Source: Stylophora pistillata (taxonomy: Eukaryota). Taken from it: a DNA stretch of 64,000 nt. The notes under the pieces were generated by a model. The model saw only the letters and a list, made by a program, of their open reading frames with translations, was not told where the DNA came from and ran no database searches. A program made the translations under genes and the position numbers. Positions 8,702-62,600 of the stretch are shown here, piece by piece (positions within the stretch are counted from its first letter, which is position 1; every line of letters starts with the position of its first letter). The stretch covers positions 260,744 through 324,743 of the forward strand of contig NW_019217889.1 in the NCBI RefSeq assembly GCF_002571385.2, read 5' to 3'.

Positions 8702-22263
<13,562 letters not shown>

Positions 22264-22474
22264 ATTTATAATTAAGGTGTTTTATTTCGTTCGTTATATT
22301 TCCATTTTTCCTTCTTTTGCATGAATTTTTTTCTAGTCCAACCGTTTTGTTTTAGAAATATTTGAAGTCCTGGGTACGATACTTGGAATCACATGATGGC
22401 GAGTCAACTTCCTCTTTTTAAAATCGTTTAGGTGCTGTCGCTCTCTTTATTATGCTTTTCATGATCAGGAAGTT

Positions 22475-23681
22475 ATAACGCAAGCTAAGGTTTTTTCGAT
22501 AACGTGAAAAAGGAAATTGAATGCCCAGTATGCTAGGAGCAATTTAGCGTAAACAAGCAACCAAAGATTCTGGAATGTCTTCATACCTTTTGCAAATCTT
22601 GCCGTACAGTAACGGAATGTCTCAACACTGATATCGATAATCTTCCGTCGAACCTGTTTTACAAACAAATAGTGGAAATTGTGGAGGCATACGCAGGTCA
22701 AGAAGAGTCATCATGTTGCGGGAAATGCGAAGAACAGAAATCGCTGAGGTTTTATTTCTCCACTGAATTGCAACTGTTTACTGTGCGAAGAATGCGCTGC
22801 AGTGCACAAGAAGTGGAAGGATTTCAGAGGCCATCAGCTCAAGGAAATGGGAAAACGTCACTCTCGTAATGTAGAGGACTACTCTCGAAGAGCAAACGTC
22901 TGCAAAGAGCACGAGGACAAAATTAGATTTTACTGCGAAGCATGTCGAATTTGCATTTGTCGTGACTGCGCCATACTGGATCACGACGACCACAAGAAAA
23001 TTTCGATAGAGAAAGGACTAGAAAGTAAGGCAACTGAAATCAAGAATAAGATATGAGAGGTTCAGGAAAACGGATCTGTCTTGAGAAACAAAAAGGAATC
23101 TCTGGAGAAACGTAGAATGTACGAATGGTTGCACAACAATAGATAACATTCAGCAGTTTGGATTTTGGCGAGGAAATTCTCTCTCGTAGGAATCTACCAG
23201 AAATAATAAATGTCGAAGAAATGTTGGAGAACAGGCTATAGGAACTATCCGTGCCTTTTGAGCCTTCACTGAATTTCCCTGAAGTTGTGTACAATTCAAA
23301 TGATTTCAGTTGCTTGAGAGACGGACCTGGAAAGCTGATAAGGACATTTACAGAACCTACGGCATCTGTTGCAGAAGGTCAAAGTTTGACTGAGGCTATC
23401 CAAGGAGAAGAGAGCACATTTACTGTGATTACTGAAAAGATATCAAGGGCCAAATTGTTTATGGCGAAATCGATCATGTCAATGATGCGATGATTTCCGT
23501 CAATGCAAGAGGGACTTTGATAGCCAGCGTCACAGACTCAAAGAATGGCCGATATCAAGTAGAGTACACAAGTGAGACGACAGGTGACTTTAAAATATCT
23601 GTTACAGTACAAGGTGAAGCCATCAAGGACAGTCCGTTTACTTTAAGGGTGAGAAAGACAGAACCAGAGACATTTTATCAG
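22475..23681 (+). pseudogene. TRIM (RING/B-box/coiled-coil/filamin) pseudogene, paralog of the exon at 28411
   Basis: The start codon is ATA instead of ATG. Deletions in the RING and coiled coil, frameshifts and stops split it into ORFs 22672, 22802, 23251 and 23490. It keeps the same TTTTATCAG|GTATC donor. Confidence 0.9.
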
Positions 23682-24169
23682 GTATCATTTTTTATGTTCT
23701 GTAAACTTTCAGGCTGTTGTAATTGAAAGAACGGAGTCTACTTGAATATGATAATTTGATAAAACCCAAATTATCATATTTTGGTTTGAGTTAATGTTGT
23801 TAAACCCAAACCAAAGTAAGCACAACGGCCCGACACAGTAAAGGAACAGCGCGTGGAACTAATCAGTTCTTGAAGTAAAAAACAAGCAAATTATCCCAGG
23901 AGCAGGAAACGTGACAGACCAAATTACTTAGCACAACTTTTCTAAACCAATCATAGAGAGAGAATAAGAAACACTGATACAATTCTGAGTTACCATCGAT
24001 ACATAAGTGAAAATGGTATGATTATTAACATTTTAAATCAAATTAATATTTAGACTCAAACTAAAGTTGCATTTGGTGCTTCAAACAATTCTGAGGATTG
24101 ATTTGTTTCTATATGAAACACACAATATATGTCCAAACTAGCAGAGGGAAAAAAATCCATATTTCATAC

Positions 24170-24499
24170 CATTTTTGTTTTGGAAAAGACAAAAACCCGT
24201 TTCATTTATTTGTTGGCATTTGCTTCCCGGGATCCCTAGGAATAGTCGCTTTTCATTGCTTCCTTTCAACTCATCCATTTTTTTCTTTCGCATAGCATAT
24301 GTCCTGTAGAGAGATGGATTTTGAACTCTTGCAATTCTCAAGATCATAATTTTGCTGTGACATGTTTTTTGAGCATGATTCTGAACTTCTTGGTATTCCT
24401 TTGCATTGTTCACAGGATCTAGCTCAACAAGATGAACGGTAAGTTCTCCACCCCATCGGTTTTTCGGCTGAGGGATCCAGTTGCTTGGCAAAATAACAT
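24170..24499 (-). pseudogene. Exon encoding the N-terminal part of a PARP (ART) catalytic domain, PARP14/PARP12-like; catalytic His position changed (LFLGI instead of LFHGT)
   Basis: Translation D-VILPSNWIPQ...EYQEV...IARVQNPSLYRTY...NEKRLFLGI...INETGF. Phase-1 acceptor tttag|AT and donor G|GTATG. No downstream PARP exon was found. Confidence 0.8.
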
Positions 24500-25070
24500 C
24501 TAAACAGGAATTATTAAAACATTGTTTAGACTTTTCATATTGTAACCAAATTGTGGTATACACGCTCGAGGTTTGGAGTACGTTTCATTGATATAAAAAC
24601 TTTCATTCATTGCAGAGGTAGTGAACCACAACAAGCTAAAATTAATATGTCAGTTGGTCCTCTTTGCCATGACGAGACTACGAGGAGCCCATATAATCTG
24701 TTTGTGTAGCCGATTGTTATTTTAGAGTGAATGTACCAGATTTACTGTTTGCCTCACCAACAGTGATATATTGCTGATTATGTATATATAGCCTGCGTCG
24801 CAGACAGTCTAAAGCTTTACTTAAACTGCATGTCAAAAAAACAAATGGATTTCTCACTTAAATCAAAGCTTTACTTAAACTGCATGTCAAAAAAACAAAT
24901 AGATTTCTCCCTTAAATGAGAAATAAAAATCATTCATCTGTATTTTTAGCAGGTCCCTACACAAGGCCATGCGCGTGTAACGCAAGGAACTGCTGCTAGG
25001 GTTTAAACCCTTGGAGTTGACTTGGCAAATTCTCTAAAGTGTATTGGGCCAACTGAAATTATATTCTTAC

Positions 25071-25965
25071 CATGAAATTTGCTGAAAACTGGCTTCGGTT
25101 TTGGGGCTACAACCAACTGAAAGGGACTTCCATTTATTGTATCGTCCCTTTATTTTGATTGATATCTTGAAGTCTCCAACAGCTCTTGGCGTGTAAGATA
25201 CACAATAACGGCCATCTTTTAAGTCCTTTACAAGAGCTGGAATATTTTTGGTTCCCTGTTGTACGGATGTGATCTCCACCGTGACGTTGTCAATTTCACT
25301 GTAGGTTGTTTTGCCGCCTGAATCCTTCGTTGTGACCGTAAAGTAGCTTACCTCTCCTTGAATACTTTCAGTTAGTCCTTGTCCTGTTCCAACAGAAAAG
25401 TAAGGCTCTGTAAAGGTTACATGTAGCACACCAAGACGGAAATCTGGAGGCAGCGTATTTATCTAATACTTGAACTCTGGATATCTTAGTAGTGGCGTAG
25501 AATTCTGAAACCTTTGCGCAACAGTTCCATGAAGCTGATGTTTTACGTCTAACATTTTCCTTACGTCATTTGTTTGTAAAACTTCTCTACCATGTCTTGT
25601 GCTCTTGTACATTAGTCGGAGCTTTTCGACGAGCTTCGACAACTCATATTTTATGGCCTCGTCGTAAAGCGACTTTTCTTTTGCCAACTTTTCTGTCATC
25701 ATTTCTTCCTGTTGACGAAGAACATTTTTAATACCTTCCGTCACGCTATGAACTTCTGCCGCCACTTTATCGATGCTATTATTGTATTTCGCTTTTCTTT
25801 CACTTAAAGACTCAAAATGGTTCCTCAGAAGCAAAGAATTCTCCTAAATATCTCTCAAGCTACTTTGGATAATCCCTCTCTGCTTCTTTGCTCCATCTTC
25901 AAGCGACATGATGTTGTGATCTATCGGATCTCGATGTTCCGTAATGGCGAATGCAGATCCAACAG
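25071..25965 (-). pseudogene. TRIM remnant (partial B-box, coiled coil, filamin), paralog of the exon at 54185
   Basis: Motifs EHRDPIDHNIMSLEDGAK and GQGLTESIQGEVSYFTVTTKD..KDGRYCVSY. In-frame stop at 25463 and a +1 frameshift near 25148. It ends AAATTTCATG|GTAAG like the 54-kb TRIM. Confidence 0.85.
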
Positions 25966-26257
25966 CGACCCAACAGCGACTGCAGGAAATAAAAAGTTAC
26001 TCTGGAAGGCACAAATTTGAATCCCATTTATAGCTTCCATACTATAATTTATTGAATTGCAGCTCATCTGCGAGGATCAAAGCTTTACTTAAACTGCATG
26101 TCAAAAAAACAAAAGTATGTTGACATGTGAGAACTTTTGGTTGATTGGTCTCAGTAAATTGTTCCTGGCAGAGGGAGCACTCCAATTCTTTCTTGATAGC
26201 ATCATAAAGAATGTTCTCACAGAACAGGCCGTATTGCTCTTTAATTCAAATAATCAA

Positions 26258-26592
26258 CTGCTCCCAGTTGGCTTGTTAGCTCAATTGGTAGACCGCTGCA
26301 CTAGTATCGCAGAGGTCAGTGGTTCGAGTCCCGTACAGGCCTGATTTTTTCAGGTCTGATTTTCGCTATTGCTTAAATAGCGCTATCTACTGCGAGGATC
26401 GTGCATCATACGTATCTAATACCGCAGTTCAAAATATATGAACTTCATATATTTCATTGTATCTGATTTATCACTTTCACGGGTTTATTACGAATCGACT
26501 TAACGGCCTGCTCCCAGTTGGCTTGTTAGCTCAATTGGTAGAGCGCTGCACTAGTATCGCAGAGGTCAGTGGTTCGAGTCCCGTACAGGCCT
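26258..26592 (+). mobile_element. tRNA-derived SINE-like tandem repeat with two tRNA-Thr(AGT)-like heads 250 bp apart (26270-26342, 26520-26592)
   Basis: Acceptor stem GGCTTGT/ACAGGCC, A and B boxes, anticodon loop CT-AGT-AT, and a mispaired T-stem. The family is multicopy in this window. Confidence 0.75.
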
Positions 26593-27029
26593 NNNNNNNN
26601 NNNNNNNNNNNNNNNNNNNNNNNNNNNNNNNNNNNNNNNNNNNNNNNNNNNNNNNNNNNNNNNNNNNNNNNNNNNNNNNNNNNNNNNNNNNNNNNNNNNN
26701 NNNNNNNNNNNNNNNNNNNNNNNNNNNNNNNNNNNNNNNNNNNNNNNNNNNNNNNNNNNNNNNNNNNNNNNNNNNNNNNNNNNNNNNNNNNNNNNNNNNN
26801 NNNNNNNNNNNNNNNNNNNNNNNNNNNNNNNNNNNNNNNNNNNNNNNNNNNNNNNNNNNNNNNNNNNNNNNNNNNNNNNNNNNNNNNNNNNNNNNNNNNN
26901 NNNNNNNNNNNNNNNNNNNNNNNNNNNNNNNNNNNNNNNNNNNNNNNNNNNNNNNNNNNNNNNNNNNNNNNNNNNNNNNNNNNNNNNNNNNNNNNNNNNN
27001 NNNNNNNNNNNNNNNNNNNNNNNNNNNNN

Positions 27030-27524
27030 TTCCATTTTCCATTCACTCGATTCACAATTCCTCCCACAGATCTTTCACTAGCGATACTTTTATCTCCAGA
27101 TCGATCGGCTTTCCAATTTCGAATTTGGCTGCTTGAAACGTTCGCGGCCCGTTCGCCGATCGCACAGTATGTTGGGTGACAAAAATAAGCCCGGCGAGGA
27201 TAGCCAGCGGCCTGCAGTCCAAAAACAATAAATTAGTAAACACATTTCCATTCGATGTTGATTGGTCGATCAAAACAATGCGGTCTTGACAAAACCTCTC
27301 GAGGGGACCAGGGGAGCTAACGGGTTTGTTTTTGGACTGCAGGCCGCTGGCTACCCTCGCCGGGCTTATTTTTGTTACCCAACATACTGTGCGATCGGCG
27401 AACGGGCCGCGAACGTTTCAAGCAGCCAAATTCGAAATTGGAAAGCCGATCGATCTGGAGATAAAAGTATCGCTAGTGAAAGATCTGTGGGAGGAATTGT
27501 GAATCGAGTGAATGGAAAATGGAA
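27030..27524. repeat. Long inverted repeat (arms about 27030-27228 and 27326-27524, spacer about 97 bp)
   Basis: The roughly 200-bp arms are reverse complements with only about 2 mismatches seen. The left arm abuts the gap. Confidence 0.9.
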
Positions 27525-28410
27525 CTGCAACATCTCTGCTTTGATTTTCTGGAGGAATCGAGACTGGTGGTAATTTTTTGGCGGAATTATTCGCTTCGGG
27601 CGACGGACGCTTCTAAAATAGGTTTCCGGCCTTGTCTTTCTTTTAGCAGTTGAACACCAACATAGCGCTAACTCGCCGAAAACGCTTCAAAATGGCCTGA
27701 GACGCTCGGAATCAACAAAGAAAACAACAAGGCAATAAGGTAAGCCCATTTTATTTCAAAACAAGACATTTTTTTCTCTCTTTTAAGGCAAACCGATAAC
27801 ATCCCATACAAACCTTTATAAAAATAAAACGTTACGCAACACGGTAAGAATCACGTCCGCTTTTCTAGGAGTGAGCTTGGGCTGCCTGTGCGTATCCAAG
27901 TGAATTAGTGTAAAACCAAAAGCAGCCCAAGCGTAAAAATTATAACAATAAAGTTAAAAAGAATAATAAAAGCGAGGAATAACACGAGTGAAGTCTCCTT
28001 ACCTTTTTTCCGTAGCCGCTTTGTTGCTAGCAGTCGTTTTAACGCTGTTTTGGCGACTTTCTTTGTAACGCGTGTAGTGCTACCGGCCAACTGAATAATT
28101 TTTCTATTTTCAGTTGACTGGTAACACCGCACGCGTTACAAACAAAGTGGCCAAAACAGCGTTAAAAGGACCGTAAAGGACAAAGTAGCCACGGGAAAAA
28201 AGTAAGGATACTTCATACCATATATTTCTCGCTTTTATTGTCCTTTGAAATGTTTTCTTAATTTTTTTTATATAATTTTTCCTTTTATAAAGTTGACTTT
28301 AGACCCCAAGATCACACACAGTCAGTACCCTTGGGCCGCCTGCGATAAAACGAAACTGTAAATCTAGATCTATTACAAAGCGAATTTCTCCCGCTGCCTC
28401 ATTAGAAGCT

Positions 28411-29817
28411 ATGGCGCAAAGTAAAAGCTTCTTCGATGATGTGAAAAAGGAAGTAGAATGCCCAGTGTGTCAGGAACAGTTTGGCGAAAACAAGGAACCG
28501 AAAATACTCAAATGTTTTCATACGTTCTGTAAATCATGTCTGGAAGGTTGGCTTCGACAACAACGCAAGGAAGCTTTGAGTTGCCCGACTTGCCGAACAA
28601 AAACTGAGTGCCCTAACAATGATATCGACAGTCTTCCGTCGAACCTGTTTTACAAACAAATGGTGGAAATTGTGGAGGCATACACTGGTCAAGAAGAATC
28701 ATCATGTTGCGGGAAATGCGACGAACAAAAATCGCTGAAGTTTTACTGCTCTAATTGCAACTGTTTACTGTGCGAAGAATGCGCTGCATTACACAAGAAA
28801 TGGAAAGACTTCAGAGGCCATCAACTTAAGGAAATCGGAAAACTTCAGTCTCGTGATGTAGATGACTACTCTCGGAAAGCAAACGTTTGCAAGGAACACG
28901 ACGACGAATTTAGATTTTTCTGTTTAGCATGTCGAATTTGCATTTGTCGTGATTGCGCCATATTGGATCACGACGACCACAAGAAAATTTCACTCGAGAA
29001 AGGACTAGAAAATAAGACAACTGAAATTAAGAATAGGATACAAGAGGTTCAGTCGAACGGATCTCACTTGAGAAACAAAAAGGAATCGTTGGAGAAACGT
29101 AGATCCAAAGTAATCGACAGCTTTGAGCGAGCAACGAACAGTGTACGCGTAATTGCAGAACAATGGATCACATTCATTCGTAAGCATGAAACAGACATCA
29201 CAGAAAAGTTAATGAAGCAGAAAGAGGCATTTAAAGCTGAATTTTCAAACCAGATGTCGAGCTTGGATGATAGACTGGTGGACATCGACAGCAGCCTGCA
29301 ATTTGGCGAGGAAATTCTTTCTCGTAAGAATCTACCAGAAATATTAAACGTCGAAGAAATGTTGGAGAACAGACTGCAGGAACTATCCGTGCCTTTTGAA
29401 CCTACACTGGATTTCCCTGAAGTTATGTACAGTTCAAATGATTTCAGTTGCTTGAAAGACGGACCTGGAAAGCTGATAAGGACAGTTTCGGAACCTATGG
29501 TATCTGTTGTGGAAGGTCAAGGTTTGACTGAGGCCATCCAAGGAGAAGAGAGCACATTTACTGTGATTACAAAAGATATCGAGGGCCAAATAGTTTATAG
29601 CGAAATCGATCAGGTCAATGTTGAAATAACTTCTATCAATAAAAAAGGGACTTTGATAGCCAGCGTGACAGACTCAAAGAATGGCCGATATCAGGTAAAG
29701 TACAGAAGTGAGACAACAGGTGACTTCAAAATATCCGTTACTGTCCGTGGTGAAGCCATCAAGGACAGTCCGTTCACTTTAAGAGTGAGAAAGAGAGAAC
29801 CACAGGCATTTTATCAG
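28411..29817 (+). CDS. Intact TRIM exon (TRIM2/3/45/71-like RBCC plus filamin), 469 codons
   Basis: [21 protein letters not shown]; B-box1 CGKC..CSNC..CEEC..H..H; B-box2 CKEH..CLAC..CRDC..H..H; filamin [17 protein letters not shown]...DSPF; donor CAG|GTATCG. Confidence 0.93.
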
Positions 29818-36773: not shown

Positions 36774-37714
36774 TCTACTGGATCGCTGACTCCCGTCAGG
36801 AGTTGAAATTCGTAACAATCATGAGACACAACTTTTCGTAGTTTCTTTATTAAGCCGGAGGGTTCTCTCTTCGTCTTCTCAAATTTGAACTATTCAATAG
36901 GTACATTGTAGGGATAGCTAAGGTGTACACAATGGCAAAAAAGATCCTTTATTCATACGTAGGTAGTCTGTTAAGACTAAGGCGCACGAGCACCTCCAGA
37001 ACTGACTGGCAGAGACCGTATTGCTAGAATAAACTTGGCGTGCGATAAAAACCGGGTTTAGTTTAATGTAGTTTGAGTGTAGTGTGTCGTAAATTTTGAT
37101 GGCTTTCTCTTTTTAGATTTCTGGTAAAGTTTCTTAGCTTGTGGAGGGAATAGCTTGTTTGTACTCCCAGTTTACTGTTTAGGGATTATGTAAGCAGCAA
37201 CCGAAAAAAATCGCTAAAACAATAATAAAGAAGGCAACCTTTTTAAAGAGCCCCTGAGACGAAAATGGACCATTTTATTTTGGCCTAACTTGTTTACACA
37301 ATGTTGAATTGGGTCAAGTTAAGACCCTTTTTGCCATTAAAAACTCAAAACAAACCTTCGATGACCAATTTTTACCGCTTCAAAGTCGTCCAAAAATCGT
37401 CCGCCATTGCTGNNNNNNNNNNNNNNNNNNNNNNNNNNNNNNNNNNNNNNNNNNNNNNNNNNNNNNNNNNNNNNNNNNNNNNNNNNNNNNNNNNNNNNNN
37501 NNNNNNNNNNNNNNNNNNNNNNNNNNNNNNNNNNNNNNNNNNNNNNNNNNNNNNNNNNNNNNNNNNNNNNNNNNNNNNNNNNNNNNNNNNNNNNNNNNNN
37601 NNNNNNNNNNNNNNNNNNNNNNNNNNNNNNNNNNNNNNNNNNNNNNNNNNNNNNNNNNNNNNNNNNNNNNNNNNNNNNNNNNNNNNNNNNNNNNNNNNNN
37701 NNNNNNNNNNNNNN

Positions 37715-44416
<6,702 letters not shown>

Positions 44417-59270: not shown

Positions 59271-59676
59271 TGAGAGTCTAAAGCGAGATATTTGTCGGTG
59301 TGGGTCGTTTTACAATAAACACTAGTCTAAGTTCCCTTGTTCCCCTCTACGCACATTTAAATCAAGAAAGGGCAAGTGTCTATCCTTTTTACGCTCAAGG
59401 GTGAATTGGATAGACGGTTCCACTGAATTCAAATGCGATAGGAGGCGTTCTGGATACGCTGAAATGGCATCATCACCTTATCGTTTCCAGAACAAGGGTG
59501 TAACCTGTAAAGTGGCTAAAGCCCTTTGTTCTACATCTTCTATTACCATATTGGCGATGACAGCAGAGACGGGCGAACCAAAGAAAATATATTTATATTC
59601 AATGATTGCTATGGCTCATAAGGTTAGAAGTGCCCACCTCCTTAAAAATCATCCAGAACTTTTCACGTTTTGACAG

Positions 59677-62600
59677 TTTCAAAATCAAGACACTCATCAA
59701 AACAACAGGAGACAGCGAGACGACGCTTCAAGAGAACCTCCCTCTCCTCAAGAGCCTACCTCTGTGACATCAGCCCAGTATGGATCACCCATTCCCGAGC
59801 AATGCACAATCGAAGTAACCGGTTTGCCAGAAGATGCATCTGAGGATTTGGTGACAATCTACTTCGAAAACACCAGACGTTCTAAGGGGGGTCCTGTGTC
59901 TTCCGTAGTCATGACACCCGAACTTCGGAAGTGCCTGGTCACCTTTGAATCTCCTGATGGTAAGAATGAATGATGATAAATCATTACATTATTATATGTT
60001 TTGGTTTATTCTTAAAACGTTTTGGTAACGGTTTAAACCTTTTTTAGATGCAGAGCGGACGATAAGTTATTCATCTCATGTTTTGAGCGGAGCAAGTATA
60101 CAAGTCTCACTGTTTGAAGAGGAGGAGGAAAGTGCCGTCGATTCCGGTGAAAACGGAGAAGACGAAGAGGAGGAAGACGGCATCACCATTATTGTCAGCG
60201 GCATCATGCCCTCCACCTCAGAGGATGCAGTGATCTTCTACTTTGAGAATTCTAGACGATCAGGAGGAGGCGATGTCTCCGAGATCCATTTCAACGAAAA
60301 AGGGGAAGCGATCATAACTTTTTCTGAGGTTAAAGGTAAACGACACTTTCTTTGAAAAGTCTCCAATTTGACAGATTTATTGATAAGTTCAGGTCTTTCT
60401 TGAGAAAAGGAAGTCAAGTTCAAATGATGCATATGATAAAATGTCAAGTAAACGTTCTTAAGCGTAATCGCTGTCTCTGAATATTTTGATTACATTAATA
60501 TTTTTAACTTTGATATTTATTACAGACCTGCAGCGCCTTCTCGAGGAGTCACACAAAATTTACGGCCAAATGATAACAGTGGTAAGACAGCCTCCTTCGA
60601 AAAAAGTGCCGCTTGATCCATTAAGAGTTCATGTTCAAGGAATCAGCGAAACGACCACCATAGATTGTTTGACCTGTTATCTGGAAAAGTTTGTTGATGT
60701 TGAGGTTGAAAATGTGTATCTTGGTGCAAAGAATAATGCCCTGGCAGTTTTTGAAAGTGAACCAGGTAATTTTATGACTACAAAGGTTTAGTTTATAGTA
60801 CTTGAATTAGATGACATTTTCATGGCTATCTTGTTTTTGAAGTCGATTCATATGCAAAAAAAAGTGGTTAGTAGTATGAGTATAAAAGAAAAATAAAAGA
60901 AGCAACATGAATGAACAATCAGTTACAACTCGAAATTTAGAGTGTAATAATGACTTTAGAGTGTTGTTACGGCTTAGTCAATCATTTTCAAACATCCTTA
61001 ACCCTTTTTTCGAAACGTTGTCATACTTGTATAATTATACTTGTACTTAGGACGATACTTTTCTTCGCCACTTGCACCAAGTCCTTGTTCTGGTCAATAC
61101 ATCTATCTAAAGTTGCACGTTACATAAGGAAACACCGATCTTCACATTTTGTGTGTTGTGTTAACCAAAATCTTTACACCGCTAATTACACGAGTGGCAA
61201 TATCACTGTTCTGCACGGATTATCTATTTCAGACTTTGAATCACTCTTGCATAAAGTTAACAAAGATAAAAAAGGCTTGGAGGGAAAGAAACCGCGCCTG
61301 GAAAGAGTAGCAGTCTGTTCATGTATTCTGGTCACGGGACTGAAGAAAGAGTCAACCGATCACACCATTGAGCTTTATTTTGACAATGAAAAACGAAGTG
61401 GTGGGAAGGATGTCTACAGAGTGGAAAGGATTAGGAAAGACCAGGCCTTAGTCTATTTCGAGGATCATACAAGTAAGAAATATGTATTGGTGTATTAAAA
61501 AGTCTCTCTGTTTTCTTTTTTCTGCGTGTTGTTTTCCTATTGCTATCACATTTTAACATTGGGGTTTTGCTACGAACTTTTCAGTTTATCTAAAACATTG
61601 TGTTTAAGGAAAACTCAAAGCCACTGTTTAGTAGATTCCTTCGGGATACTCTCATGTGATAGCTGATTTATCACTTGGAGAGGGAGGGGAGAGGTGGGAT
61701 TGGAGAATTTCAGTGATTTCAAAATGAGATGTATCTGAACCCCCCCCCACCAACCCCATTGAGCTCTGCAGTATTCTCATAATCCTCCAAAGGTAAGCTA
61801 TGATTTTCATGATCCCACTTCCATGGTATTGACGTGCAGATACCAATCTTAAACTGACCTAACCCCCGAGACTCCCCCTCTCAGCTTTTTTTTAAATGAG
61901 GCAAGAGGATTTTATCTGGGTAACTGTTCACTCCTGTAGCTGTTCATTTCTCTTGGAGGTATATTTGTTGTGAATCTGGTGAAAATCAGCCAGTAGATAT
62001 GGGAGATATTAAATAACAAGTTGGTTATGGTTTAAAGGTTTGACATAATGTAATATGAATTGGTAATACCTTGATTTCGAGTGCAATTTGGTGTTGATGA
62101 GCATGAGTATATTTTTCAAAGAAAACAAAATAAGGAATGCTAAGAACTAACCATAGCAAGGGTGTGAGGTTGGAAAGAAAGCGTACTTTTGGTAAACTGC
62201 TCTCTACAAGACTGATTACCCTACTGAATAGGATGTTGTATAGTGCAGGCTTTGTTTTTTGTATGGCACCACTTTGTCTGTTTGTTTGTCTGTTGATTGA
62301 CAATACTCAAATAATACTGAAGAGTGTCTTTCACTCAGGAGTTCATGATGTCATTGCAAGAAGCCAGAGACAGGCCAACGCCCTTGACGGCGCTATCTTG
62401 GAAGTGACGCCGTACTACCCTTTCCTGGGAAACGGAGATGACGTTCAATCTAGAAGTTGATACCATGAATACATTAATCCCGGTTTATCCCAAGGTAAAC
62501 TGCTACTTGAGGAGCGCAGAGTGGCTGAATTCCTACATGGCTCGATAGTCACGATTTCACCCTCGGGAAGGGACCCTTCATCAGAAGAACGAACTGAGAA

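What the first reader, a model, noticed from the sequence alone, without database searches (positions are those of the whole stretch)
24170..25965. Fossil TRIM-PARP fusion, head-to-head with the TRIM-Macro-Deltex gene
Seen: the minus-strand TRIM remnant ends ...SKFH G|GTAAG (phase 1 once the +1 frameshift is corrected). The next exon, 571 bp away, is a phase-1 PARP catalytic exon (G|AT VILPSNW...). The fusion points away from gene C. Inference: a TRIM-filamin module was joined to an ART writer domain here and to a macro/Deltex reader-ligase next door, forming a divergent PARP/DTX pair reminiscent of PARP9/DTX3L. The H-to-L change in LFHG would make it inactive, as PARP9 largely is, unless the change postdates decay.
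Basis: partly seen in the sequence, partly recalled or inferred. Interest (0 to 1): 0.75.

Follow-up and report, generated by a model that had tools for sequence, protein, structure and literature searches.

The report
Dead copy of coral TRIM-PARP gene
This stretch is a broken, silent partial copy of a real coral gene that joins a TRIM ubiquitin ligase to a PARP-like domain that has probably lost its enzyme activity; the live gene sits elsewhere in the genome and is expressed.

Summary
On the minus strand, a TRIM remnant (half a RING, coiled coil, filamin) ends in a phase-1 donor. A 571-nt intron (24500-25070) follows, then the first PARP catalytic exon (24170-24499) with LFLG in place of LFHG.

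RNA from 4 of 4 runs splices exactly this intron. Those transcripts carry the letters of a 95-97% identical paralog on contig C153, not the window's.

The window copy is a truncated duplicate:
- the start codon reads ACG;
- 273 nt of RING/B-box are replaced;
- there are two stops and an extra A;
- the second PARP exon is missing.

Homology ends abruptly at both ends, so the fusion did not arise here. The facing of gene C is secondary.

The parent family is real and already in GenBank as "PARP14/15" of Stylophora pistillata. I found no paper describing it.

Every member of this clade carries L, so the change predates decay. The L-bearing domain shows purifying selection (pN/pS 0.39, p=0.002).

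In two paralogous loci the gene is divergently paired with a short RING-DTC Deltex gene. A second TRIM-PARP lineage seems to have formed independently.

The parts
26225..26234 (-). Former start-codon context of the TRIM-PARP copy. The ATG of the paralogs reads ACG here, and homology to the paralogs ends just upstream.
   Evidence: Three-way nucleotide alignment; coordinates.
26112..26224 (-). First half of the RING finger (ILYDAIKKELECSLCQEQFTETNQPKVLTCQHTF).
   Evidence: Translation. It is 94.5% identical to L021 8870-8979.
25953..26111 (-). Replacement segment. About 160 nt resemble the repeat in the gene's own intron, and they stand where the paralog and the transcripts have 273 nt coding the rest of the RING and the B-box.
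   Evidence: blastn; read laying joint '25949->26112 skips 162, 273 letters between'; repeat family D1.
25463..25952 (-). B-box tail and coiled coil, broken by two in-frame TAG stops (25846-25844 and 25465-25463).
   Evidence: The paralogs and all laid RNA read GAG and TCG at these codons (25846 A>C and 25464 T>G; in X24, 17 of 17 and 18 of 18 reads).
25071..25462 (-). Filamin repeat with one extra A near 25149-25151 (a frameshift). It ends in ...SKFH G|GTAAG, a phase-1 donor.
   Evidence: PF00630, E=1.9e-14; frame change; 'left out 1' at 25149/25151 in the RNA runs.
24500..25070 (-). Intron 1 (571 nt, GT..AG). It holds two tandem copies of a 53-nt repeat and a roughly 100-nt element (24692-24782) with very high RNA depth on both strands.
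   Evidence: Joint 24499->25071 in 4 of 4 RNA runs; repeats.
24170..24499 (-). PARP catalytic exon 1 (phase 1 at both ends, open frame). It has LFLG where active PARPs have LFHG.
   Evidence: An RNA contig piece covers 24170-24499, and the loose end at 24170 reads into exon 2 of the paralog.
23784..24169 (-). Remnant of intron 2. Homology to the paralogs stops at 23784, a few bases before the point where PARP exon 2 begins in them.
   Evidence: blastn against L021 and L023. Exon 2 is present in C153 and C745 and absent from the window.
23752..23783 (.). A 32-nt junction filler, with a short inverted repeat, between the two truncated gene copies.
22469..23751 (+). A second fossil: a partial, frameshifted copy of gene C's TRIM exon (77-88% nucleotide identity, with an internal deletion). 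It lies tail to tail with the TRIM-PARP copy.
26258..26592 (+). Two tRNA-Thr(AGT) units that replace the gene's 5' flank. They are followed by the 437-N gap at 26593-27029.
   Evidence: ARAGORN; Rfam; repeat D2; N runs.

Best explanation
The window holds a non-functional, untranscribed partial duplicate (an unprocessed pseudogene that keeps its introns) of a live coral gene. That gene has three coding exons:
- exon 1: RING, B-box, coiled coil and filamin (RBCC-filamin);
- exons 2 and 3: a PARP14/15-type ADP-ribosyltransferase fold.

A 2.45-kb piece, running from the start codon to intron 2, was copied from a C153-type allele that already carried the filamin frameshift. It landed tail to tail against a partial copy of gene C's TRIM exon. 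It then picked up more damage: ATG to ACG, a RING/B-box replacement and two stop codons.

For the parent family I infer a TRIM E3 ligase whose C-terminal PARP fold no longer binds or uses NAD+ in the normal way. Its triad reads L-Y-I instead of H-Y-I/L, and its pocket motif reads DALHPAQSSFS instead of DASYSA.S.YS. The fold would then act as a recognition or partner-binding module, as the inactive PARP folds of PARP13/ZAP and PARP9 are thought to do. The gene is transcribed divergently from a short RING-DTC Deltex gene.

Shown here: the anatomy, the paralogs, the splicing, the age of the L, and purifying selection. Inferred: loss of catalysis, a binding role, and co-regulation with the Deltex neighbour.
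For: Layout is conserved in paralogs. C153 (L021) and C745 (L023) keep TRIM exon, intron, PARP exon 1 and PARP exon 2.

Database proteins have the same junctions:
- P0002, 613 aa, 'PARP14 [S. pistillata]';
- P0246, 638 aa, PFX25338.1;
- P0021, 417 aa, from a Logan contig;

The RNA comes from the paralog, not from the window (4 of 4 runs):
- The 571-nt intron is spliced out.
- The laid RNA shows the C153 letter at 26 of the 34 exonic sites where the window and C153 differ. The other 8 are not among the rows shown.
- In the raw-read run X24 every read shows the C153 letter at 21 of those 26 sites.
- At the other 5 sites, 2-4 reads show the window's letter. At 25661 and 25667, both sites 9 nt or less away are all-C153 (22 of 22 reads), so those reads point to a third haplotype rather than the window copy.
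- The transcripts also lack the extra A and both stops, and they contain the 273 nt that the window has lost.

The copy is truncated at both ends. It is not a haplotig: only 23784-26122 is 95-97% identical to C153, while the neighbours are 79-93% identical and in a different order.

The L is shared by all clade members. Pocket substitutions occur in 2 of 9 exon-2 copies, namely the two TRIM-PARP a genes, and were aligned to PARP15.

Selection:
- PARP exons, C153 against C745: pN/pS 0.39, Fisher p=0.0017.
- TRIM part, C153 against C745: pN/pS 0.28, p=6e-7.
- Window against C153: pN/pS 0.57, p=0.16.

The divergent pair with the short Deltex gene is collinear between C153:138000-146577 and C745:54397-46812.
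Against: - Silence rests on four RNA runs. Three are contigs, which drop rare variants, and only about 6% of X24 was read. A weak or tissue-specific transcript is not excluded.
only shows that runs from two studies hold 0.58-0.68 of the stretch's words.
- 'Dead on arrival' is not proven against in-place decay of a complete gene. Later deletions could give the same ends.
- Loss of catalysis is inferred from residue identity. The roles of these residues are recalled from the PARP literature. No assay or ligand model was run.
- All four copies in the reference assembly carry some lesion. The C153 reference allele is frameshifted. C745a has an insertion of about 350 bp in exon 1. The PARP exon 1 of C745b has a disrupted 3' end. 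The family may therefore be decaying as a whole in this species.
Confidence: 0.8

Rival explanations
1. The window copy is not a separate locus. It would be the second haplotype, or an assembly chimera, of the C153 TRIM-PARP gene.
For: It is 95-97% identical over 2.4 kb, and it shares the same extra A and neighbouring substitutions with the C153 reference. Corals are highly heterozygous (recalled).
Against: The flanks are not collinear. On both sides homology to C153 ends abruptly, while other parts of the window match C153 at 79-93% in a different order. The window copy also has private structural lesions. An independent 2024 study's run holds 0.58 of the stretch's words. That is more than the 0.30-0.32 held by RNA runs, which carry only the paralog.
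Confidence: 0.07
2. A complete TRIM-PARP gene once worked at this site, facing gene C across a shared promoter. It then decayed in place through deletions at both ends.
For: The orientation is head to head. In two other loci the live gene really is divergently paired with a Deltex gene. Deletions and tRNA-unit insertions could have erased the ends.
Against: - The copy shares the frameshift patch with the C153 reference allele, while C745, P0021, P0238 and the RNA contigs lack it. The source was therefore already broken, or the patch arrived by gene conversion.
- Divergence from C153 (dS 0.03-0.06) is far lower than for the surrounding paralogous DNA at about 85% identity.
- The ancestral partner in the paralogs is a short RING-DTC gene that is absent here.
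Confidence: 0.12
3. The PARP exon is an unrelated insertion next to a TRIM pseudogene, and the matching phases are chance.
For: Two phases match by chance one time in three. The exon alone is below Pfam's cut-off.
Against: The same TRIM-intron-PARP layout occurs in two more loci. The exact 571-nt intron is spliced in 4 of 4 RNA runs. Four database proteins carry the junction SKFH|DVILP.
Confidence: 0.01

Closest known systems
Annotated Stylophora pistillata TRIM-PARP genes. These are P0246 = PFX25338.1 'Poly [ADP-ribose] polymerase 14' on C153, and P0002 'PARP14' and P0004 'PARP15' on C745.
   Same: Same exon structure and junctions. The window copy is 95-97% (C153) and 82-91% (C745) identical in nucleotides. 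It has the same LFLG.
   Different: The window copy lacks the start codon, most of the RING and B-box, and PARP exon 2. It has two stops and no detectable transcripts of its own. RefSeq splits the C153 gene into a 'TRIM56-like' and a 'PARP15-like' model (P0249, P0248). The GenBank models bridge the lesions with odd splices.
Human PARP14/PARP15 catalytic domain (for example PDB 3blj, 3goy)
   Same: It is the best solved relative of the PARP part. P0021 residues 233-417 align to PARP15 at E=1.7e-38. The triad Y is kept, and an I sits where PARP15 has L in the aligned 'pk-L-fvvf' stretch. That this position is the third triad residue is recalled. The phase-1 acceptor sits at the same spot as in this coral's macro-PARP genes.
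   Different: The H of LFHG is L here. The S and Y of the DASYS..Y motif are L and F. No macro or WWE domains precede it; an RBCC-filamin module does.
Filamin-bearing TRIM ligases (TRIM45, TRIM2/3, TRIM71)
   Same: RING, B-box, coiled coil and one filamin repeat, in that order. PDB hits to the filamin domains of TRIM3, TRIM45 and TRIM71. The protein-atlas neighbours are TRIM45-like clusters.
   Different: The C-terminal module is a PARP fold, not NHL repeats or nothing. To my recollection, no TRIM class with a PARP domain has been described.
Vertebrate PARP9-DTX3L divergent gene pair, and the inactive PARP folds of PARP9 and PARP13/ZAP
   Same: A PARP fold without the triad histidine, linked to ubiquitin ligase activity. 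The live paralogs are head to head with a Deltex-type RING-DTC gene. ZAP's PARP domain is a PDB hit (E=3e-13).
   Different: Here the E3 (the TRIM) and the PARP fold are on one chain. There is no macrodomain. The Deltex partner lacks KH-like domains at E<=1e-6. The vertebrate locus arose after the lungfish split according to the preprint passages, so any likeness is convergent. The triads of PARP9 (Q-Y-T) and PARP13 (Y-Y-V) are recalled, not tested.

Membership tests
TRIM / RBCC ligase with filamin repeat | Complete RING finger | tested here: not met
   In the window only the first half remains (26112-26224); the rest lies in the 273 nt that were replaced. In the parent P0246, PF13639 scores 42.3 bits. 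No Pfam score was obtained for the window's RING piece (one search was an error, and the piece was then dropped).
TRIM / RBCC ligase with filamin repeat | B-box zinc finger | tested here: not met
   It is lost with the replaced segment in the window. It is present in the parents: PF00643 in P0002, P0246 and P0238.
TRIM / RBCC ligase with filamin repeat | Coiled coil between B-box and C-terminal domain | tested here: inconclusive
   The 126-aa piece aligns to the paralogs' coiled-coil region and is cut by two stops. No coiled-coil predictor was run, and Pfam gave only sub-threshold hits.
TRIM / RBCC ligase with filamin repeat | Filamin/ABP280 repeat | tested here: met
   PF00630, E=1.9e-14, 54.7 bits against a cut-off of 26.9, although frameshifted near its end.
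PARP (ARTD) catalytic domain, PARP14/15 group | Complete catalytic fold | tested here: not met
   The window has only exon 1 (profile positions 2-70 of 199; 20.7 bits, below the 26.7 cut-off), and exon 2 is absent. Parents are complete: P0021 scores 60.5 bits over positions 2-197 and matches PARP15 at E=1.7e-38.
PARP (ARTD) catalytic domain, PARP14/15 group | Histidine of the H-Y-[E/I/L] triad | tested here: not met
   L aligns with the H of PARP15's LFHG. L is found in 3 of 20 aligned genomic copies, Y in 1 and H in 16. L is also found in P0021, P0238, P0052, P0065 and P0068.
PARP (ARTD) catalytic domain, PARP14/15 group | Triad tyrosine and third residue | tested here: met
   Met in the parents only: the Y of YGNGLYF, and the I of NIFVIF, which aligns with the L of PARP15's 'pk-L-fvvf' stretch. 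That these are the triad positions is recalled. Both lie in exon 2, which the window lacks.
PARP (ARTD) catalytic domain, PARP14/15 group | NAD+ binding and ADP-ribosyl transfer | not testable with these tools
   This needs a biochemical assay.
Unprocessed (duplicated) pseudogene | Introns kept, a close intact or expressed parent elsewhere, disabling lesions, and no transcripts of its own | tested here: met
   Introns 1 and 2 are retained. The parent is on C153, with an intact allele in RNA. Lesions are listed. Reads carry the parent's letters.
PARP9-DTX3L type divergent pair | Head-to-head genes sharing a short promoter | tested here: inconclusive
   In the window the orientation is met, but the fossil has lost its ATG and its upstream homology. 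About 2.2 kb with two tRNA genes and a 437-N gap lie between the two genes. The live paralogs are 2.7-3.4 kb from a short Deltex gene. No promoter test was done.
PARP9-DTX3L type divergent pair | PARP partner carries macrodomains; common descent with the vertebrate locus | tested here: not met
   P0002, P0021, P0238 and P0246 have no macro domain. The preprint passages place the origin of the vertebrate locus after the lungfish split.

The most novel reading that the evidence does not exclude
Some reef corals keep a conserved, expressed TRIM E3 ligase whose substrate-facing end is a catalytically dead PARP14-type fold (L-Y-I). It is transcribed divergently from a minimal RING-DTC Deltex gene inside a PARP14/DTX3L-like immune gene cluster. 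This would be a convergent counterpart of the vertebrate PARP9-DTX3L module, but with the E3 and the pseudo-PARP on one chain.

The cluster makes such chimeras repeatedly by phase-1 exon shuffling. The same RBCC-filamin exon, with its donor after SKF[HQ], is found joined to PARP, to PARP14-type RRMs, to macro and to RING-DTC modules. TRIM-to-PARP joining happened at least twice. The window's fossil is one by-product of this churn.
Probability: 0.35. Interest if true: 0.6.

Novelty: new variant of a known kind. Interest (0 to 1): 0.4.

Why it matters
The object in the window is an ordinary dead gene fragment. What it points to is less ordinary.

It belongs to a TRIM ligase family with a PARP-like C-terminal domain. 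That family sits in sequence databases under misleading names ('PARP14', 'PARP15', 'TRIM56-like'), and I found no description of it in print. The phrase 'TRIM-PARP' returned 0 papers, and searches turned up nothing relevant.

The family shows, inside one gene cluster, how ubiquitin and ADP-ribose signalling modules are re-paired by exon shuffling in an animal without interferon. It also offers a natural pseudo-PARP, under purifying selection, for testing what inactive PARP folds do.

For annotation, the window copy should be flagged as a pseudogene. The C153 gene should be treated as one gene that is polymorphic for a frameshift.

Tried and rejected
- PARP exon as an independent insertion: rejected (see rivals).
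- Processed retrocopy: rejected because both introns are retained.
- Haplotig of C153: unlikely.
- Wider search for TRIM-PARP with PARP exon 1. There were 259 hits at E<=0.001 among 1.84 billion representatives, and 150 were listed. Most are exon-sized fragments. I Pfam-scanned 10 of the longer ones (316-770 aa), and 0 of 10 had RING, B-box or filamin; all were macro/WWE/KH-PARP. Nine longer hits (1134-2177 aa) were not scanned.
- Search with the PARP part of P0002. It gave 4 proteins among 127 candidates, and only P0002 and P0021 were TRIM-PARP.
- JGI metagenome scan with P0021. 75 pattern matches, none confirmed.
- Protein atlas with P0002. Only TRIM45-like clusters appeared, with scores of 0.81 or below, and no TRIM+PARP cluster. 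That is a lead only, and a blank proves nothing.
- Earlier-findings search by the words 'TRIM PARP filamin fusion': 0.
- Rfam on 22000-28500: only the two tRNAs.
- Structure prediction was not run. The sequence match to PARP15 structures was judged sufficient.
- I built no spliced model and searched none. The window and the loci were searched exon by exon, and the joined step was left out.
- Supplementary files of the papers were not consulted. Those of PMC10221186 (its homolog lists) might name these proteins.
Full report
WHAT IS IN THE WINDOW

The window is G000:C106:260744-324743 of a 398-Mb eukaryotic assembly. Named database proteins that lie on contigs of exactly the lengths of C745 (127,073) and C153 (607,975) are from the coral Stylophora pistillata.

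On the minus strand between about 26234 and 23784 the reading frames give, in order:
- the first half of a RING finger;
- about 160 nt that are not coding;
- the end of a B-box and a coiled coil, cut by two TAG stops (25846-25844 and 25465-25463);
- a filamin repeat (PF00630, E=1.9e-14) whose last 26 residues lie in another frame;
- a donor G|GTAAG at 25071|25070;
- 571 nt of intron;
- an open 330-nt exon (24170-24499) that encodes the first third of a PARP catalytic domain, with LFLG where PARPs have LFHG.

IT IS A COPY OF A REAL GENE

A search of the whole genome with the PARP exon gave 25 matches at E<=0.001. Two are close: C153 at 94% and C745 at 86% amino-acid identity.

Both loci keep the whole layout: TRIM exon, intron, PARP exon 1, intron, PARP exon 2. 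The last ends ...YPEYLITFS-stop.

Database proteins show the same joints:
- P0002 (613 aa, 'PARP14 [S. pistillata]', C745), with ...SKFH|DVILPSNW... and ...QNKK|APTDMYG...;
- P0246 (638 aa, PFX25338.1, C153);
- P0021 (417 aa, from a 2,323-nt Logan contig), which matches the C153 gene but has an intact frame;
- P0238 (543 aa, Logan), a B-box-to-PARP protein 82% identical to P0021 over 417 residues with no gap.

P0238 comes from a genome other than this assembly. That is an inference, which finds no copy closer than 86% apart from C153. Its taxon is unnamed, and I did not try to trace it.

RNA

I laid three RNA contig sets and one raw-read RNA run, each from a different study, on window 23600-26300. 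All four show the joint 24499->25071, skipping 571 nt with GT..AG on the minus strand. A loose end at 24170 reads into PARP exon 2.

The transcripts are not the window's:
- The window and C153 differ at 34 exonic sites. At 26 of them the laid RNA shows the C153 letter. The other 8 are not among the rows shown.
- In the raw reads (X24) every read has the C153 letter at 21 of those 26 sites.
- At the other five sites, 2-4 reads of 17-30 have the window's letter. At 25661 and 25667 the neighbouring sites 25648 and 25670 are all-C153 (22 of 22), so those reads point to a third haplotype, not the window copy.
- The transcripts read GAG and TCG where the window has its stops.
- They lack the extra A. 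It is absent from the single contig covering the site in each of the three contig sets, and from 11 of 15 reads in X24.
- They carry 273 nt where the window has 162.

So the live gene is the C153-type locus. It is polymorphic: the reference allele is frameshifted, and other individuals carry an open allele. The window copy has no detectable transcripts in these runs. The limits are that contigs drop rare variants and that only about 6% of X24 was read.

HOW THE WINDOW COPY AROSE

Only 23784-26122 matches C153 at 95-97%. The rest of the window matches C153 at 79-93% and in a different order, so this is not a haplotig.

Homology ends just upstream of the former start codon, which reads ACG. Two tRNA-Thr units follow, and then a 437-N gap. 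At the other end it stops at 23784, a few bases before the point where PARP exon 2 begins in the paralogs.

Next come 32 nt of filler and the 3' end of a plus-strand partial copy of gene C's TRIM exon (22469-23751; 77-88% identical; internal deletion and frameshifts).

The copy shares with the C153 reference allele a small patch, namely the extra A plus neighbouring substitutions. C745, P0021, P0238 and the RNA contigs lack it.

My reading is that a fragment of an already frameshifted allele was duplicated here. It was dead on arrival, and it then gained the two stops, the ATG loss and the RING/B-box replacement. The replacement came from a repeat also present in its own intron.

Its divergence from C153 is small and not distinguishable from neutral (pN/pS 0.57, Fisher p=0.16). 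In-place decay of a once complete gene is not excluded.

THE PARENT FAMILY AND THE H-TO-L QUESTION

Across the 20 PARP exon-1 copies of this genome that I aligned, 16 have LFHG. The three TRIM-PARP 'a' copies have LFLG, and one, TRIM-PARP 'b', has LFYG. P0021, P0238 and the genomic ORF fragments P0052, P0065 and P0068 from other assemblies also have LFLG. The change is therefore old and not a product of decay.

In exon 2 the two 'a' genes read DALHPAQSSFS, while the other 7 of 9 copies read [DHE]ASYS....YS. In the alignment to human PARP15 these are the S and the Y of 'DASYSAKDTYS', and the L is opposite the H of LFHG.

From the PARP literature I recall that the histidine, this serine and this tyrosine contact NAD+ (H862, S904 and Y907 in PARP1). 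I also recall that PARP9 (Q-Y-T) and PARP13 (Y-Y-V) lack the histidine and are inactive or nearly so. On that basis I infer a domain that no longer uses NAD+ normally.

The domain is not drifting. Between C153 and C745 the PARP exons give pN/pS 0.39 (Fisher p=0.0017), against 0.28 for the TRIM part. An open, spliced orthologue exists in another genome (P0238).

The most likely function is therefore a TRIM E3 ligase that uses a dead PARP fold as a binding module. This step is inferred.

THE DIVERGENT PAIR

In the window the fossil does face gene C, but this is a secondary juxtaposition.

In C153 and C745 the live 'a' gene lies head to head with a short gene of two recognisable exons, RING and DTC. 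That gene is 3.4 and 2.7 kb away. The whole unit is collinear between C153:138000-146577 and C745:54397-46812, including about 2 kb of intergenic DNA at 77% identity.

It cannot be homologous to PARP9/DTX3L:
- there is no macrodomain;

In the passages of PMC10221186 that I read, all S. pistillata macro-PARP proteins found resembled PARP14. That paper searched for proteins with both macro and PARP domains, so it would not have listed these.

A SECOND TRIM-PARP AND EXON SHUFFLING

C745:56241-59263 (minus strand; P0004, 'PARP15') is another TRIM-PARP. Its TRIM exon is 75% identical to the TRIM exons of TRIM-RRM genes (window 54161-55456; P0005) and only 53% to the 'a' TRIM.

Its PARP exon 1 is sister to that of the neighbouring RRM-macro-PARP gene (support 99/98 on a 111-column tree), not to the 'a' clade. 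Two independent joinings, or heavy gene conversion, are implied.

In the reference, the 3' end of that exon is disrupted, and the annotated model skips the LFYG segment.

The phase-1 acceptor of PARP exon 1 sits at the same position in the macro-PARP genes I inspected (L004, L006, L008, L010 and L014). The RBCC-filamin exon ends in a phase-1 donor after SKF[HQ] in several genes.

RBCC modules related to it are found fused to other partners:
- PARP;
- PARP14-type RRMs (P0005);
- macro (P0033, in which no filamin repeat was detected);
- RING-DTC (P0011, Oculina).

This is a cluster that shuffles symmetric phase-1 exons.

NOVELTY AND VERDICT

The window object is an ordinary pseudogene fragment. 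The family behind it is present in GenBank and RefSeq under names that hide its architecture.

I found nothing in print:
- the search for 'TRIM-PARP' returned 0 papers;
- searches combining TRIM, PARP, coral and filamin, and Stylophora pistillata with PARP14, returned nothing relevant in their listings;
- the one listed paper I opened beyond PMC10221186, PMC6208414, had only a reference-list hit.

Earlier notes of this scan cover gene C and the DTX3L-macro gene, not this. One of them led me to the 2026 preprint.

I rate the TRIM-plus-dead-PARP architecture as a new variant of known kinds, and the interest as moderate.

Noticed in passing
window 12077-12149, 26270-26342, 26520-26592, 50127-50199, 51180-51252: There are five tRNA-Thr(AGT) genes, each inside a repeated unit of roughly 150-230 nt that also occurs on C745. 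RNA depth over 26239-26300 is enormous (up to about 165,000 in contig word depth). The units sit at rearrangement boundaries in this cluster, which raises the question of whether they are true tRNA genes or a tRNA-derived mobile element.
   Followed up: partly
window 15470-22281 and 37838-44434: The two stretches give identical stop-to-stop ORF lists (KH-like, macro, RING and DTC exons of a Deltex gene plus downstream DNA). This is either a very recent segmental duplication or an assembly duplication, beside the 302-N gap at 37413-37714. Likewise 49222-50087 equals 50275-51140 around a single N at 50230.
   Followed up: no
window 54161-55456 and 59674-62457 (+): An open 432-aa RBCC-filamin exon is followed by exons encoding PARP14-type RRM domains. 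This is the window's counterpart of P0005 (TRIM-RRM, 706 aa). Its TRIM exon is 75% identical to that of the second TRIM-PARP lineage.
   Followed up: partly
window 24692-24782: A roughly 100-nt element inside intron 1 has RNA contig depth above 1000 in three runs and reads on both strands in X24. It has an inverted second copy in the C153 intron. It is probably a small transposable element that is expressed elsewhere.
   Followed up: no
L023 3535-3800 (C745:51534-51799): An insertion of about 350 bp, of a repeat that also occurs in the window (56475-56702, minus strand), splits the TRIM exon of the C745 TRIM-PARP gene. The GenBank model P0002 treats part of it as coding (a run of S) and loses the start of the filamin repeat.
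   Followed up: partly
C153:145411-146567 (+) and C745:46822-47933 (-): A short Deltex-type gene with only RING and DTC exons recognisable lies head to head with each live TRIM-PARP a gene. No KH or macro exon was found at E<=1e-6 between it and the TRIM-PARP gene. Whether it is expressed was not checked.
   Followed up: partly
C153 locus, window-equivalent 25135-25153: The expressed C153-type gene is polymorphic for the frameshift patch. In raw-read run X24, 11 of 15 reads lack the extra A and 4 keep it. The broken allele may therefore also be transcribed in some individuals.
   Followed up: no
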